Under the pieces are notes generated by a model, which was not told the origin of the DNA, did no database searches, and saw only the letters and a list, made by a program, of their open reading frames with translations. A program made the position numbers and the translations under genes. 64,000 nucleotides of DNA from Gekko japonicus (lineage: Eukaryota), in the NCBI RefSeq assembly GCF_001447785.1, contig NW_015170345.1:62001-126000 (forward strand), given 5' to 3'. Positions 15,765 through 51,968 of the stretch are shown piece after piece (position 1 is the first letter of the stretch; the number at the start of each line of letters is the position of its first letter).

Positions 15765-15858
15765 TCAAGATATATTTGCAAACACAGGCCTTGGTGGGAT
15801 TGGAGGTCGCAAAGGAGGTCTTGATGGAGGTGGACCTGGCAGATGTTGCACTGGTGGC
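15765..15858 (-). CDS. ADAM9-like exon 22 (Pro-rich SH3-ligand tail, stop)
   Basis: [30 protein letters not shown]. Confidence 0.82.
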
Positions 15859-18800
15859 CTAAAAGGATGGAAAACACTATTATTGCCTGCTTTTAAAAGG
15901 GTTTAAACAAACAGTTTAAAACACTGCCCATTTATAGAAACAGATATATATTAAATTATACTGAATTTTTTTTTTAAACATGGCAAACCTTGGTGTAGGA
16001 AAGTGTGATATTGTAAAGACTCCAGAATTTGATGTAGCAAGCTGAGGAAGAAAAAGAATAGTAGGAATGAGTCATTTTTCATGTCAGTATATGAAACTGC
16101 CTTGCACTGATTCAGAAAATTGGTCCATCTAGTTCAGTATTGTCTAGTCTGACTTCGATTGGCTGTATATGGATTCTGGCAGAAGTCTTTCCTAACACCT
16201 GCTATCCAAGGTCTTTTTCCAACAGGAGATGCTATGGATTGAACTTGGGACCTGTTGTATGGGAAATATGTGCTCTACTGCAGAGTCACAGCACCTCCAT
16301 GTTGCTTTGTTTCCTGGTATAACAGTGAAACAACCTCATTTATGTATTTTATCAAAAAACTGCACATTATTAAAGTTTTATTTCAGATTTTTATAAATTA
16401 TTAACAGAAAACCTGACATAAAAGATTCCTTTAGATACACAAATCATTCCCATCCACCTCCCAATATAATTTTATGATCAGGACAAAATGAGCTAGAGAA
16501 ATATACACTGTTTTAACTGTTATACTAATCCAGTGTTCTGCAAAACTACAGGGAGAGGTGGAACCCCTTCATTAGTGTCAGTAACCTGTAAGGGAAAAAA
16601 TCATGATCAAAACAATCAAAATTCTTACCCTCCTGTTGTTCACTGCATTGGGCTGGTTTGGTCCAGTTGGCATATTATTCTGTCTTGCCTGCTGCTGTGC
16701 ATTTTTAGCCCTTGCATATTAAAACAAATAAGTAAAAGTAACATCAACATATACATTTTTTTAAAAAAAGACTCAGTGCAGTATAATGTATTTATGCTTT
16801 ACAGTCTTGATCGAGTTCCTTAATTTCTTAATACTTCTTAACATTTTGTCTTGTCCATGTATTTCCCCCCAGAAAAGTTCTCCCACTATATATCACCATT
16901 TGGTGATAGACAGATCATTTAGTGATATATATACGATCTCCAGGGCAGTCAACAATCTGGGGGGAGGGGGATCTGTTTTAAGTCTGAAGAGACATCGCTT
17001 GTTCAAGTAGGCTAACACAGGAAGGATACAGATCAACACAAGGAACCACTTCCCAAACAATTGGAAACCTACCTCTCTCTCTCTCTCTCTCTCTCTCTCT
17101 NNNNNNNNNNNNNNNNNNCCAGGGGAATGAACAATCTGGGGGGGGGGGGGATCTGTTTTAACTCTGAAGAGAGCTTGCTTGTTCAAGTGGGCTAACACAG
17201 CAAGGATACAGATCAACACAAGGATCCACTTCCCAAACAATTGGAAACCTCTCTCTGTCTCTCTCCCTCTCTTTTTTGGTGATTCTCTTTGGTTCATCAC
17301 CCACCCCCCTTCATATCTTATAAAATTGTACTATCTGACATAGAATTAGGGCCTGGATTGAGCCTCCATCCTCTGCTAAACCTATGTTACTATAATTTCT
17401 AATCTATAGTAAATTATAGTTGAATCTTTGGTTCTGTTTCCCAGGAGGCTTCAGGACTCTGCTGGTGCTGTGGCCTTCCTAGTACTGATACCCTGTACAT
17501 GACTTTTGCCTTAGAGGGTGTTTATACATTCCAGGAGTAGCGGGGCCACTATCAGAGTCTAAATAGATAAGGTATCTGGATATAGCTTCCCTTGACTTTT
17601 TGACCCCAGAGATAGAAAGAAGGGAGGGATTTGGGTCGGTTCATCACGTCAGTTCTGGTCAGTTCTAGTGTGTCACATCCATGGCAGTCCTATGTGTTAG
17701 GTATGTCAGTAGGTACATTAACAGCTATAGGTCCAAGAAAGGTATATACCTCTGGTTTACCAATGGTCGCGGGGCTGCTCATCAATGCTAAGGGGCCTTG
17801 ATGCGGAATGTATTTTAACTGTAGAGTTTTTATTTTTTTATCCATTGTTGTACATCGGCCAGAGCCCTGCAGTAGCAGGGACGGGCAATTCAGAAATCTA
17901 AATAACAACAACAACATTCCTTATTTGTCTGGGTGTACACTGTGGATTTCCGTATTCTACTTGATATCTACTTGGAACATAATAAACTGAACTTAGAAGG
18001 AAGCTTCGGTCTGTGACTTTTTCTCTCTCTCTGACAAGGAAGTGACCAGCCAGCCATACCCACCAAATTGGAACTTGGGCCTGGAAGCTTGGGGGGGGGG
18101 GGGTTCTAGGATAACCCTGTCTCTCCCCCCCACCCCTTTTTACTGAGAAGTTCCCCAACACAATCATCTACAGCTAGTCATCAAGGATACCAATTTAAAA
18201 GGTTTTAGGTGTTCAAAGTGTTTTAAATCTAGATCTCACTATAAAACCAAACGCTTACTGGTATTACATATGTTTCCAGTGGATTCTGAAACTCTTTAAT
18301 TTGATACGTTTTAGCACTCCCTTAGAATATGTGAGGTTAAAAAAAGGATTGCTACCTACCACATAAGTGTATAATCCCCAGAGTGGTACAGAGTTTAAGT
18401 GCTGCTTCTACACATTTCTGTAACAAGCTGCTTTGACTTTGGTGATTAAATGGCTTTTGAATTTTGCTTCAAAAGAAAAACTGCTTTTAATTAGGGTTGC
18501 TAGACCCCTGGTCGGGGCAGCGATTCCCCTGATTTCCAGGGCTCCAGCCCCGCCACCAGCCAGCTGGCCGGCAGGGGTAGCCCCACTCTCAAACAGGCAT
18601 GTCACTTCAAAGGCTTTAAAGACTGGTAACTACATAGGCTACAAAACTGGTTAACATTTTTTTCCCCCATACAATGTTTCACAGGTGTCTAATTGTTTTA
18701 ACACTGGCTGTCTTAACCGTGTCCTACACAGGGACTATTCTGTTTATTATCCATCTTATTTATTTATTACCTCTGGCGTCTTCGACATTCTCTGCAAAGC

Positions 18801-51800: not shown

Positions 51801-51968
51801 ATCCAAATACTATGAGTTAATTGAACAGGGGAAGATGACTTCTAAAGTCTCTTTAAACATGTAGTCAGGAGGGAAAAAACAAACCAGAAACTCACCCACT
51901 GTTAGCACTTGTTTTCCAATGCTGGTTGTCAGCGCTAAAATGAATAAATAAAGACAACTTTCTAACAT
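15765..51968 (-). CDS. ADAM9-like disintegrin and metalloproteinase, 22 coding exons (about 800 aa if the exon 14 lesion is bypassed)
   Basis: 22 GT-AG exons with exon boundaries like ADAM9. Motifs: RRRR-AVLPQ furin site, [88 protein letters not shown], PxxP tail. No symbol given because synteny argues for a paralog rather than ADAM9 itself. Confidence 0.93.
15989..16041 (-). CDS. ADAM9-like exon 21
   Basis: Strong pyrimidine tract, [18 protein letters not shown]; phase 0 to 2 links exons 20 and 22. Confidence 0.72.
16629..16710 (-). CDS. ADAM9-like exon 20 (cytoplasmic)
   Basis: aag|G..AGG|gtaag, [27 protein letters not shown], phase 2 to 0. Confidence 0.72.
18771..18903 (-). CDS. ADAM9-like exon 19 (transmembrane)
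   Basis: [38 protein letters not shown], 133 nt. Confidence 0.94.
20600..20878 (-). mobile_element. Squam3-type SINE
   Basis: Reverse complement of the 49050 element. Confidence 0.8.
21429..21534 (-). CDS. ADAM9-like exon 18 (EGF-like)
   Basis: [35 protein letters not shown], 106 nt. Confidence 0.95.
22788..23117. mobile_element. Non-autonomous hAT element (TAGGGTTGCC termini)
   Basis: tagggttgccaa..ttggcaacccta; perfect 8-bp TSD ttctgtgc. Confidence 0.9.
23619..23699 (-). CDS. ADAM9-like exon 17
   Basis: [27 protein letters not shown], 81 nt. Confidence 0.94.
25952..26123 (-). CDS. ADAM9-like exon 16 (Cys-rich domain, hypervariable region)
   Basis: [33 protein letters not shown], 172 nt. 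Confidence 0.95.
27064..27169 (-). CDS. ADAM9-like exon 15
   Basis: [34 protein letters not shown], 106 nt. Confidence 0.95.
28867..29073 (-). CDS. ADAM9-like exon 14 (disintegrin loop), with an 11-nt frameshifting insertion; alternative in-frame start at 29041
   Basis: FKVAG[+TTTTTTTTGGA][39 protein letters not shown]; 207 nt, and removing 11 nt restores frame. Confidence 0.9.
30946..31035 (-). CDS. ADAM9-like exon 13 (disintegrin)
   Basis: [30 protein letters not shown], 90 nt. Confidence 0.95.
32128..32335. mobile_element. hAT-type MITE (208 bp)
   Basis: caatgctccctctaagctg..cagcttagagggaacactg; perfect 8-bp TSD cttttgac. Confidence 0.9.
33667..33838 (-). CDS. ADAM9-like exon 12
   Basis: [32 protein letters not shown], 172 nt. 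Confidence 0.96.
34952..35073 (-). CDS. ADAM9-like exon 11 (zinc-binding site and Met-turn)
   Basis: [40 protein letters not shown], 122 nt. Confidence 0.96.
35905..36200 (+). repeat. Tandem repeat, about 3 x 102 bp
   Basis: aatgcaaagagtccagtggcacctttaagaccaag.. recurs at about 35939, 36041 and 36141. Confidence 0.9.
37416..37500 (-). CDS. ADAM9-like exon 10
   Basis: [28 protein letters not shown], 85 nt. Confidence 0.95.
37578..38002 (+). mobile_element. CR1 LINE 3' fragment
   Basis: Decayed ORF2 end ([13 protein letters not shown]) and 3' tail tctatgattctgtgattct. Confidence 0.88.
38987..39159 (-). CDS. ADAM9-like exon 9
   Basis: [38 protein letters not shown], 173 nt. Confidence 0.95.
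39841..39912 (-). CDS. ADAM9-like exon 8
   Basis: [24 protein letters not shown], 72 nt. Confidence 0.92.
39996..40061 (-). CDS. ADAM9-like exon 7 (furin site, start of protease domain)
   Basis: [22 protein letters not shown], 66 nt. Confidence 0.94.
42815..43034 (-). CDS. ADAM9-like exon 6 (Cys-switch region)
   Basis: [32 protein letters not shown], 220 nt. Confidence 0.93.
43150..43180. repeat. (CA)n microsatellite
   Basis: Direct observation. Confidence 0.95.
43689..43765 (-). CDS. ADAM9-like exon 5
   Basis: [26 protein letters not shown], 77 nt. Confidence 0.93.
44842..44920 (-). CDS. ADAM9-like exon 4
   Basis: [26 protein letters not shown], 79 nt. Confidence 0.9.
46005..46081 (-). 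CDS. ADAM9-like exon 3
   Basis: [26 protein letters not shown], 77 nt. Confidence 0.88.
46765..48622 (+). mobile_element. Possible solo LTR
   Basis: tgtca..tgaca termini, TATA-like tatataaaag at about 47751, AATAAA cluster at about 48454; TSD not identified. Confidence 0.4.
48716..48955 (+). mobile_element. Squam3-related SINE (older copy)
   Basis: tRNA-like head tgtagtggttaag..ggtttgattcccca and family 3' end. Confidence 0.7.
49050..49338 (+). mobile_element. Squam3-type SINE, full length
   Basis: gagagccagtttggtgtagtggttaag head, family body, CT-rich tail. Confidence 0.85.
49496..49587 (-). CDS. ADAM9-like exon 2 (prodomain)
   Basis: [20 protein letters not shown].., YEIxxP motif, 92 nt. 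Confidence 0.85.
50098..50451 (+). repeat. Tandem duplication (about 153 bp; second copy has an insert)
   Basis: tctacctgtttttacaaatacct..gacttgctcatcattgttcaa occurs twice. Confidence 0.9.
50520..50870 (+). mobile_element. L2-type LINE 3' fragment
   Basis: tggaacacgctccc..tgtgagctgccctgag..gggtataaataaa tail. Confidence 0.6.
51896..51968 (-). CDS. ADAM9-like coding exon 1 (signal peptide)
   Basis: acc[28 protein letters not shown]|gtgag, phase 1 matches next exon. Confidence 0.75.

What the first reader, a model, noticed from the sequence alone, without database searches (positions are those of the whole stretch)
15765..51968. ADAM9-like sheddase between PAAT and PSTK: a candidate ADAM9 ohnolog absent from the human locus
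Seen: a 22-exon ADAM with ADAM9-like exon phases and motifs ([38 protein letters not shown]) lies between PAAT and PSTK. Known: human C10orf88 and PSTK are neighbours at 10q26.13 with no ADAM between them as far as I know, in the FGFR2-TACC2-PLEKHA1-HTRA1 block. ADAM9 lies in the paralogous FGFR1-TACC1-PLEKHA2-HTRA4 block at 8p11. Inference: this is the whole-genome-duplication sister of ADAM9, kept in this reptile and lost in the human lineage. It would be a poorly characterised membrane protease with an intact catalytic motif.
Basis: partly seen in the sequence, partly recalled or inferred. Interest (0 to 1): 0.8.

Follow-up and report, generated by a model that had tools for sequence, protein, structure and literature searches.

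The report
Gecko ADAM9-like (ADAM9L) protease gene
This is a gecko's copy of ADAM9-like, a membrane-bound zinc protease gene that is an ancient sister of ADAM9, kept by fishes, amphibians, reptiles and birds but lost in mammals; the gene is real, but it was described in 2015 and is routinely annotated.

Summary
A 22-exon ADAM gene lies on the minus strand at 15765-51968, between PSTK (minus) and PAAT (plus). All 21 introns are GT-AG. The cysteine switch, RRRR furin site, [12 protein letters not shown] zinc motif, transmembrane helix and proline-rich tail are intact. The N gap (17101-17118) lies inside intron 19 and hides no exon.

In trees the protein falls with 100/100 support among gecko "ADAM9-like" proteins. 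That clade (100/99) holds a shark, teleosts, amphibians and sauropsids but no mammal, and it is sister to all ADAM9. Forcing the gene into squamate ADAM9 is rejected (AU p = 6e-10). Another gecko and eight other reptiles have both genes. Four passerine gene models fuse ADAM9-like to PSTK, so the adjacency is conserved.

Bahudhanapati et al. 2015 described Adam9-like as present in non-mammalian vertebrates and lost in mammals. Parry et al. 2009 noted that the human 10q26 block paralogous to the ADAM9 block lacks an ADAM. Only the explicit "2R ohnolog" label goes beyond these papers, and it stays inferred.

One caveat: exon 14 carries 11 extra bases that break the frame unless a downstream acceptor is used. 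That acceptor would remove 7 residues that are otherwise never missing. The scan had already noted this on the same window (s1-824324).

The parts
51896..51968 (-). Exon 1: ATG and signal peptide ([25 protein letters not shown]), ends in phase 1
   Evidence: 96% identical to the N-terminus of Euleptes ADAM9-like P0170; GT donor. A rival candidate at 52272-52345 was rejected: it has an in-frame TGA and needs a GC donor.
49496..49587 (-). Exon 2, prodomain
   Evidence: tblastn with gecko orthologues; AG/GT
46005..46081 (-). Exon 3, prodomain
44842..44920 (-). Exon 4, prodomain
43689..43765 (-). Exon 5, prodomain
42815..43034 (-). Exon 6, prodomain with cysteine switch (FLCGV); its last codon is the first R of the RRRR furin site
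39996..40061 (-). Exon 7: RRRAVLPQ..., end of the furin site and start of the catalytic domain
39841..39912 (-). Exon 8, metalloprotease domain
38987..39159 (-). Exon 9, metalloprotease domain
   Evidence: Pfam Reprolysin E 3e-13; used as query
37416..37500 (-). Exon 10, metalloprotease domain
34952..35073 (-). Exon 11: zinc-binding motif [12 protein letters not shown] (34996-35031) and the SYIMHS stretch (read as the Met-turn, not tested)
33667..33838 (-). Exon 12: end of the catalytic domain, start of the disintegrin domain
   Evidence: Pfam Reprolysin C-terminal end
30946..31035 (-). Exon 13, disintegrin domain (ends ...CCENCK, phase 0)
   Evidence: Pfam Disintegrin; RNA reads present
28867..29073 (-). 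Exon 14, disintegrin loop and start of the Cys-rich domain. From the conserved acceptor (29073) it is 207 nt and out of frame. From the acceptor cag|TGC (exon start 29041) it is 175 nt and in frame.
   Evidence: Pfam Disintegrin + ADAM_CR; RNA depth about 7 over 28867-29031 and the exon 14-15 junction seen in 5+1 reads
29048..29058 (-). 11 extra bases (TTTTTTTTGGA) inside exon 14, relative to FKVAG|MQCR of the orthologues
   Evidence: all 28 orthologues have exactly 7 residues between CK and CR
27064..27169 (-). Exon 15, Cys-rich domain
   Evidence: spliced reads
25952..26123 (-). Exon 16, Cys-rich domain (LGSDVPDP at 25991-26014)
23619..23699 (-). Exon 17: end of the Cys-rich domain, start of the EGF-like domain
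21429..21534 (-). Exon 18, EGF-like domain
   Evidence: 100% identical to gecko orthologues; weak Pfam EGF_2 hit
18771..18903 (-). Exon 19, transmembrane helix ([20 protein letters not shown]) and basic stop-transfer stretch
17101..17118 (.). Assembly gap, inside intron 19 between two copies of one repeat
16629..16710 (-). Exon 20, cytoplasmic tail
15989..16041 (-). Exon 21, cytoplasmic tail
15765..15858 (-). Exon 22: proline-rich (PxxP) tail and TGA stop
1621..7556 (-). Downstream neighbour PSTK (exon matches at 7556-7182, 4321-4127, 3299-3228, 2566-2459, 1809-1621)
   Evidence: TIGR03575 selen_PSTK_euk; Pfam KTI12; PSTK halves of the bird fused models
62440..62772 (+). Upstream, divergently transcribed neighbour PAAT (C10orf88): exon with the PAAT-like domain
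   Evidence: PF14958, E 2.2e-22

Best explanation
The stretch is the gecko orthologue of ADAM9-like (ADAM9L). This is a type I membrane protein of the adamalysin (M12B) family. Its parts, in order, are a signal peptide, a prodomain with a cysteine switch, a furin site (RRRR), a zinc metalloprotease domain ([12 protein letters not shown]), disintegrin-like, cysteine-rich and EGF-like domains, one transmembrane helix, and a proline-rich cytoplasmic tail of the kind that binds SH3 domains. By analogy with ADAM9 and other active ADAMs, a proprotein convertase would activate it in the secretory pathway, and it would then shed the ectodomains of neighbouring membrane proteins. The architecture, the motifs and the orthology are shown here; the activity and any substrates are inferred. 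The gene is an ancient paralogue of ADAM9 that split off before sharks and bony vertebrates diverged. It sits beside PSTK in the chromosome block paralogous to the ADAM9 block, so it is most likely a 2R ohnologue, and it was lost in the mammalian lineage. My confidence is about 0.95 for orthology to ADAM9L and about 0.7 for origin by whole-genome duplication.
For: Gene model: 22 exons, all GT-AG. Pfam domains lie in the correct order. The closest proteins are gecko 'ADAM9-like' sequences: 81% identity over the tblastn matches and 88-89% over the aligned spliced model. Careful ML tree: window + geckos 100/100; ADAM9-like clade 100/99 including a shark and teleosts; this clade is sister to all ADAM9, and the two together have 95/91 support. 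The AU test rejects placement with squamate ADAM9, p 5.9e-10. The same species have both genes. All 28 orthologues checked keep HExGHxxGxxHD, and 27 of them the CGV switch. The window's terminal branch (0.046) is shorter than those of the other geckos, so I see no sign of relaxed constraint. PSTK and PAAT flank the gene. Four passerine models fuse ADAM9-like with PSTK in the same order. RNA-seq reads of the same species cover exons 13-16 and show the exon 14-15 junction. Literature: Adam9-like is present from elephant shark to birds and lost in mammals (PMC4550289); the 8p11 and 10q26 blocks are paralogous and 10q26 has no ADAM (PMC2681008; PMC8983885).
Against: With the conserved acceptor, exon 14 is frameshifted by 11 bases. 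The in-frame alternative removes 7 residues that are never missing in 28 orthologues, and its use is backed only by thin read depth. Monophyly of all ADAM9 against ADAM9-like has weak support (59/38). Neither the wider synteny (HTRA1, PLEKHA1, TACC2, FGFR2) nor the presence of ADAM9 in this genome could be checked. No activity or substrate data exist for any ADAM9L in the literature I could search.
Confidence: 0.9

Rival explanations
1. A recent squamate or gecko duplicate, or a translocated copy, of ADAM9 itself.
For: NCBI names are mixed: some members of the clade are labelled 'ADAM9'. Identity to turtle ADAM9 is about 52% over the tblastn matches.
Against: The window sits in a clade with 100/99 support that also holds shark, teleost, amphibian and bird sequences. 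Holding it with squamate ADAM9 costs 735 log-likelihood units, AU p 5.9e-10. Squamates have a separate ADAM9 clade (100/100).
Confidence: 0.01
2. The gene is the ADAM9L orthologue but is dead or dying in this species: the 11-base insertion in exon 14 truncates the protein after the catalytic domain.
For: From the conserved acceptor the frame breaks and stops after ...[17 protein letters not shown]. Four other AG dinucleotides lie between the conserved acceptor and the rescuing one, so the spliceosome would be expected to prefer the frameshifting site. The rescued form lacks a hairpin whose length never varies in the orthologues.
Against: This is the only lesion in 2.4 kb of CDS. All 42 splice sites are intact. 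The terminal branch is short. RNA is present and spliced, and read depth drops from about 7 to almost nothing just beyond 29032-29041 instead of continuing to 29073. An assembly error or a polymorphism is not excluded, because the DNA contigs laid did not clearly span the site.
Confidence: 0.12
3. An ancient paralogue of ADAM9 that arose by a small-scale duplication before or after 2R, not by whole-genome duplication.
For: The tree dates the split only to before the shark/bony-vertebrate divergence. The ADAM9 subfamily is prone to tandem duplication and retroposition (PMC4550289). The authors of that paper could not say which gene came first.
Against: ADAM9L has the full multi-exon structure, so it is not a retrocopy. 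It lies in the block paralogous to the ADAM9 block rather than in tandem with ADAM9. The paralogy is documented; that PSTK and C10orf88 lie in the same 10q26 block is from my own knowledge of the human map.
Confidence: 0.2
4. A member of another ADAM subfamily: a testis ADAM, ADAM12/19/33, ADAM8/15/28, or a relative of the venom metalloproteinases.
For: The closest solved structures are P-III snake venom metalloproteinases and ADAM22. That reflects only which ADAM-type structures have been solved.
Against: An alligator testis-type ADAM, ADAM15 and a fish ADAM annotated brevilysin-like (not classified further) fall outside the ADAM9 + ADAM9L group, which has 95/91 support; two further testis-type ADAMs lie on long unresolved branches outside both clades in the quick tree.
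Confidence: 0.01

Closest known systems
Adam9-like / ADAM9L of non-mammalian vertebrates (Bahudhanapati, Bhattacharya & Wei 2015, PLoS One, PMC4550289; RefSeq 'ADAM9-like' of Eublepharis, Euleptes, Anolis, birds and others)
   Same: Same orthologous clade (100/99). 88-89% identity to gecko members over the aligned model. Same domain order, zinc motif, furin site and proline-rich tail. Same neighbour (PSTK) as in birds.
   Different: In this assembly exon 14 has 11 extra bases. The only in-frame product lacks the 7-residue FKVAGxx spacer present in all 28 orthologues examined. Exon 16 also lacks one codon (NLL-EIY versus NLPPEVY).
ADAM9 (MDC9, meltrin gamma), 8p11 in human
   Same: Sister clade. 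About 52% identity over the tblastn matches. Same MDC architecture, catalytically competent motif and SH3-binding type tail. It lies in the paralogous TACC-PLEKHA-HTRA block.
   Different: A separate gene since before the shark/bony-vertebrate split. It is present in mammals, whereas ADAM9L is not. Placing the window in the ADAM9 clade is rejected (p 6e-10).
Testis ADAMs (ADAM2/18/32 group II; ADAM20/21/24-26 group I)
   Same: Same ADAM9/9-like subfamily according to PMC4550289.
   Different: These are long-branched, and many lack the catalytic motif or introns. They fall outside the ADAM9 + ADAM9L group in my trees.
P-III snake venom metalloproteinases (atragin, VAP1, catrocollastatin) and the ADAM22 ectodomain
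   Same: Best solved-structure matches for the catalytic, disintegrin and Cys-rich part (E 4e-88 to 2e-65). They are suitable templates for the fold.
   Different: The venom enzymes are secreted, lack a membrane anchor and, from general knowledge, derive from the ADAM28 lineage. ADAM22 is catalytically inactive.

Membership tests
ADAM (adamalysin/reprolysin, MEROPS M12B) membrane-anchored metalloprotease-disintegrin | Reprolysin catalytic domain with HExxHxxGxxHD | tested here: met
   Pfam PF01421 on exons 9, 11 and 12, at or above the gathering score per exon; [12 protein letters not shown] at 34996-35031. SYIMHS follows the motif; I read it as the Met-turn but did not test this.
ADAM (adamalysin/reprolysin, MEROPS M12B) membrane-anchored metalloprotease-disintegrin | Prodomain with cysteine switch and a proprotein-convertase site | tested here: met
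   LCGV in exon 6 and RRRR|A across exons 6/7, as in most orthologues (CGV in 27 of 28; a convertase-type site matched in 22 of 28). Pfam Pep_M12B_propep was not detected on single exons but is recorded for the orthologues.
ADAM (adamalysin/reprolysin, MEROPS M12B) membrane-anchored metalloprotease-disintegrin | Disintegrin-like, cysteine-rich and EGF-like domains | tested here: inconclusive
   PF00200 hits on exons 13 and 14 (28.8 and 32.9 bits) are each below the whole-domain cut-off of 35.1 because the domain is split between exons. ADAM_CR scores 35.3 bits, above its cut-off. The EGF hit is weak. The frame of the disintegrin domain depends on which exon 14 acceptor is used.
ADAM (adamalysin/reprolysin, MEROPS M12B) membrane-anchored metalloprotease-disintegrin | Signal peptide, a single transmembrane helix and a cytoplasmic tail | tested here: met
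   Read directly from the model: hydrophobic N-terminus, [20 protein letters not shown] followed by KRH, and six PxxP motifs in the tail. No dedicated signal-peptide or TM predictor was run.
ADAM9-like (ADAM9L) orthologous group | Falls in the ADAM9-like clade, not in ADAM9 | tested here: met
   Clade support 100/99; window + geckos 100/100; AU test against ADAM9 placement p 5.9e-10.
ADAM9-like (ADAM9L) orthologous group | Conserved genomic neighbourhood | tested here: met
   The window has PSTK(-), ADAM9L(-), PAAT(+). Four passerine read-through models join ADAM9-like to PSTK in the same order and orientation.
ADAM9-like (ADAM9L) orthologous group | No mammalian member | tested here: met
   Among the best 120 hits to bird ADAM9L, every protein above about 49% identity is sauropsid or amphibian. 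The only mammals (platypus, Petaurus) are ADAM9 proper. PMC4550289 reports the loss in mammals. The human interval itself was not searched.
2R ohnologue pair ADAM9 / ADAM9L | The duplication is older than the split of cartilaginous and bony vertebrates, and the two clades are sisters | tested here: met
   Both clades hold chondrichthyans and osteichthyans. The ML tree has them as sisters, with 95/91 support for the pair but only 59/38 for ADAM9 monophyly. No cyclostome was sampled.
2R ohnologue pair ADAM9 / ADAM9L | The two genes lie in paralogous chromosome blocks (FGFR1-TACC1-PLEKHA2-HTRA4 versus FGFR2-TACC2-PLEKHA1-HTRA1) | not testable with these tools
   The block paralogy, and the absence of an ADAM at human 10q26, come from the literature (PMC2681008; PMC8983885). 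That PSTK and C10orf88 lie in that 10q26 block is from my own knowledge. The window holds only PSTK and PAAT, and no eukaryote genome collection was available.
ADAM9 proper | Membership of the ADAM9 clade | tested here: not met

The most novel reading that the evidence does not exclude
ADAM9L is the 'missing ADAM' of the human 10q26 TACC2-PLEKHA1-HTRA1 (AMD) region: a true 2R ohnologue of the cone-rod-dystrophy gene ADAM9, lost in the mammalian stem. Non-mammalian vertebrates would then keep a second, uncharacterised ADAM9-type sheddase that may share or split ADAM9's functions. In this gecko it would in addition survive an 11-base exonic insertion by using the acceptor that the insertion itself created.
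Probability: 0.3. Interest if true: 0.4.

Novelty: already known. Interest (0 to 1): 0.2.

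Why it matters
The practical result is a confirmed annotation. The gene is an orthologue of a family described in 2015 and already named in RefSeq (chicken symbol ADAM9L). A small point of interest is that three published or observed facts fit together. ADAM9L exists outside mammals. The human 10q26 block paralogous to the ADAM9 block has no ADAM. In sauropsids the gene sits beside PSTK, which lies in that block. Together they make ADAM9/ADAM9L a likely case of an ohnologue lost in mammals, which matters when ADAM9 phenotypes in mouse or human are compared with those in chicken, frog or fish. 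No functional study of ADAM9L was found, so the protease remains uncharacterised.

Tried and rejected
1. A candidate first exon at 52272-52345 ('...AFTSDAFQIKG', weakly similar to the bird N-terminus) was rejected. It has an in-frame TGA at codon 6 and needs a GC donor. The exon at 51968 matches gecko N-termini at 96% and has the right phase.

2. A separate exon for residues ~176-205 was looked for between 42779 and 40067. It is not needed: exon 6 is one 220-nt exon.

3. Pfam on the prodomain exons and on the large ORFs at 11.5-12.1 kb and 59.4-60.0 kb gave nothing.

5. The search of earlier findings for HTRA1, PLEKHA1, TACC2, FGFR2, IKZF5, ACADSB, HTRA4, TM2D2 and ADAM32 in this genome returned only unrelated DMBT1 notes.

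6. Read laying did not settle the exon 13-14 junction or the 11-base insertion. Fewer than 3 junction reads were listed, and the DNA contigs stop short of the site.

7. Rfam found nothing in the window.

8. Literature searches for functional work on ADAM9L/adam9b found only a gene-list mention in chicken.

Full report
**Observation.** The gene is on the minus strand. Three of the four quoted motifs are contiguous there: [12 protein letters not shown] at 34996-35031, LGSDVPDP at 25991-26014 and LRDGLLVFF at 18869-18895. The fourth, RRRRAVLPQ, is made by splicing exon 6 (last codon R) to exon 7 (RRRAVLPQ from 40061). Pfam scans of single exon reading frames find Reprolysin, Disintegrin, ADAM_CR and EGF pieces in the expected 5'-to-3' order.

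**Gene model.** I used gecko orthologue proteins as guides and read every boundary in the DNA. The result is a 22-exon model from the ATG at 51968 to the TGA at 15765-15767, with AG and GT at all 42 splice sites. These are exactly the finding's coordinates. The model encodes:
- a signal peptide;
- a prodomain with an LCGV cysteine switch;
- an RRRR furin site;
- the complete zinc motif, followed by SYIMHS, which I take to be the Met-turn;
- disintegrin-like, cysteine-rich and EGF-like domains;
- a transmembrane helix;
- a tail with six PxxP motifs.

**Assembly gap.** The Ns at 17101-17118 lie in intron 19, between exon 19 (18903-18771) and exon 20 (16710-16629). They sit between two copies of the same interspersed repeat. 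Gecko orthologue proteins pass from exon 19 to exon 20 without a missing residue. The gap therefore hides no exon and does not affect the frame. Only the intron's length is uncertain.

**How relatives were found.**
- A 57-residue exon cannot reach full-length relatives in the word search because of its length window. I therefore sent exon 9 by reference to the exhaustive representative search.
- Its best full-length hit was a bird protein that NCBI names 'ADAM9-like'.
- Word searches with that protein and with a turtle ADAM9 returned named ADAM9-like and ADAM9 proteins from sharks to mammals.
- The joined 799-residue model was never sent to any search or folding tool. It was built only inside scripts, from window coordinates, for local alignments and trees.

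**Identity.**
- By summed tblastn matches the closest proteins are gecko ADAM9-like sequences: Euleptes 81%, Eublepharis 80% and Sphaerodactylus 77% over the matches, and 88-89% over the aligned model. The window therefore comes from a gecko.
- I built a 68-row quick tree and a 43-row careful tree (LG+C20+F+G4 by PMSF). Both give the same picture.
- The window groups with geckos at 100/100, inside squamate ADAM9-like at 100/100.
- The whole ADAM9-like clade has 100/99 support. It holds a shark (Stegostoma), teleosts (Osmerus, Denticeps), amphibians, tuatara, turtles, a crocodilian and birds, but no mammal.
- ADAM9 of bony vertebrates (96/93) and of cartilaginous fishes (96/99) form the sister group in the ML tree. 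That join is weakly supported (59/38), while ADAM9 plus ADAM9-like together have 95/91 against the outgroups.
- Holding the window together with squamate ADAM9 costs 735 log-likelihood units and is rejected, AU p = 5.9e-10.
- Nine reptile species in the two hit lists have both genes, including the gecko Eublepharis (P0162 and P0275).
- Among the best 120 hits to bird ADAM9-like, every protein above about 49% identity is sauropsid or amphibian. The mammals in the list are ADAM9 proper.

**Neighbours.**
- Downstream on the same strand is PSTK. Three exon frames match TIGR03575 (eukaryotic L-seryl-tRNA(Sec) kinase) at profile positions 53-156, 153-219 and 275-337, and Pfam reports KTI12.
- Upstream, transcribed the other way, is PAAT (PF14958, E 2e-22).
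- Four passerine gene models in the database are read-through fusions of ADAM9-like with a KTI12-domain protein. Their C-terminal halves match the window's PSTK exons in order, and one of them (the only one scanned) matches the PSTK profile at E 2e-101.
- The ADAM9L-PSTK adjacency and orientation are therefore shared by birds and this gecko.

**What is already known.**
[quoted passage not shown] They found it in fishes including elephant shark, amphibians, reptiles (Anolis) and birds, called it a close paralogue of ADAM9, and noted that both arose early in vertebrate evolution. They did not tie it to the 2R duplications.
- Parry et al. [quoted passage not shown] PMC8983885 gives the same block paralogy.
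- That human C10orf88 and PSTK lie distal to HTRA1 in that 10q26 block is from my own knowledge of the map.
- Chicken has the gene symbol ADAM9L, which appears in an expression list (PMC12166876).
- I found no functional study of the protein.
Only the explicit ohnologue statement goes slightly beyond them. It is supported by the age and sister position of the clades and by the block paralogy, but it is not proven here.

**Likely mechanism.**
- Shown: the domain architecture of an active ADAM, and its conservation. All 28 orthologues examined keep HExGHxxGxxHD and 27 of them the CGV switch. The window's terminal branch is short (0.046), which argues against relaxed constraint.
- Shown: RNA-seq reads from two runs of the same species cover exons 13-16, and the exon 14-15 junction appears in 5+1 reads.
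- Inferred from ADAM9 and other catalytically active ADAMs: a proprotein convertase removes the prodomain at RRRR. The membrane-anchored enzyme then sheds ectodomains of neighbouring membrane proteins, and its tail recruits SH3-domain proteins.
- The closest solved folds are P-III venom metalloproteinases and the ADAM22 ectodomain.

**A blemish in exon 14.**
- Orthologues read ...CK FKVAGxx CR..., with exactly seven residues between the two cysteine motifs in all 28 sequences, shark to bird.
- The window reads TTTAAAGTAGCAGGA, then eleven extra bases TTTTTTTTGGA (29058-29048), then ATGCAGTGCAGG.
- From the conserved acceptor (exon start 29073) the frame breaks and stops 16 codons into the exon.
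- An acceptor cag|TGC (exon start 29041), preceded by the new T8 run, restores the frame but deletes FKVAGMQ.
- In the RNA runs, depth is about 7 over 28867-29031 but only about 23 read-bases in the next 174-base bin. That fits an exon ending near 29041 and argues against a dominant mRNA that keeps the insertion from the conserved acceptor.
- No exon 13-14 junction reached the listing threshold, exon 13 is covered more thinly, and the DNA contigs laid do not clearly span the site.
- Three readings remain open: a real insertion rescued by its own acceptor, an assembly error or polymorphism, or a truncating allele whose transcripts are degraded.

**Not done.**
- No search of the human or other mammalian PAAT-PSTK interval for decayed exons.
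- No look-up of ADAM9 in this genome.
- No comparison of exon phases with an ADAM9 gene.
- No cyclostome sequences in the tree.
- No signal-peptide or transmembrane predictor.

**Verdict.** The feature is already known: an orthologue of ADAM9-like/ADAM9L. Interest is low. The one residual curiosity is the exon 14 insertion.

Noticed in passing
window 29048-29058 (exon 14 of the ADAM gene): Eleven extra bases (T8+GGA) relative to every orthologue break the frame from the conserved acceptor. An acceptor at 29041, just behind the new T-run, keeps the frame but removes 7 residues (FKVAGMQ) whose number never varies in 28 orthologues. RNA depth stops near 29032-29041. The junction itself was not seen, and no DNA read support was obtained.
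   Followed up: partly
window 26666-26731 (intron 15): A 66-base partial copy of the middle of exon 16 ([22 protein letters not shown]) with no usable splice sites. It keeps the proline codon that the real exon 16 lacks (NLL-EIY versus NLPPEVY in orthologues) and is closer to the orthologue sequence than the exon is.
   Followed up: partly
window 16950-17300: Two copies in tandem of one interspersed repeat, each preceded by a (GA)n run, flank the 18-N gap. The gap probably marks a collapse or an unresolved join within a repeat array.
   Followed up: partly
window 30250-30770 (intron 13): A very high-copy interspersed repeat: summed contig depth is about 15,000-19,000 in two DNA runs, against 40-100 for the flanking DNA. 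Many broken joints and loose ends were laid there.
   Followed up: no
window 25900-31100: DNA contigs of two runs carrying the same species label differ from the window at about 2-3% of positions, plus several small indels. This suggests divergent individuals or populations, or a loosely applied species label.
   Followed up: no
window 10000-12100: The only GC-rich stretch of the window (GC 0.52), with long open frames on both strands and no Pfam hit. It lies between the PSTK exons and the 3' end of the ADAM gene and is probably the PSTK CpG-island promoter and first exon.
   Followed up: no
proteins P0137, P0176, P0179, P0213 (passerine annotations): Four database gene models are chimeras of ADAM9-like and PSTK. 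They are useful as evidence of synteny, but they are annotation errors in those records. NCBI labels within the ADAM9-like clade are also inconsistent: some members are called ADAM9 and one older Anolis record is called ADAM8.
   Followed up: partly
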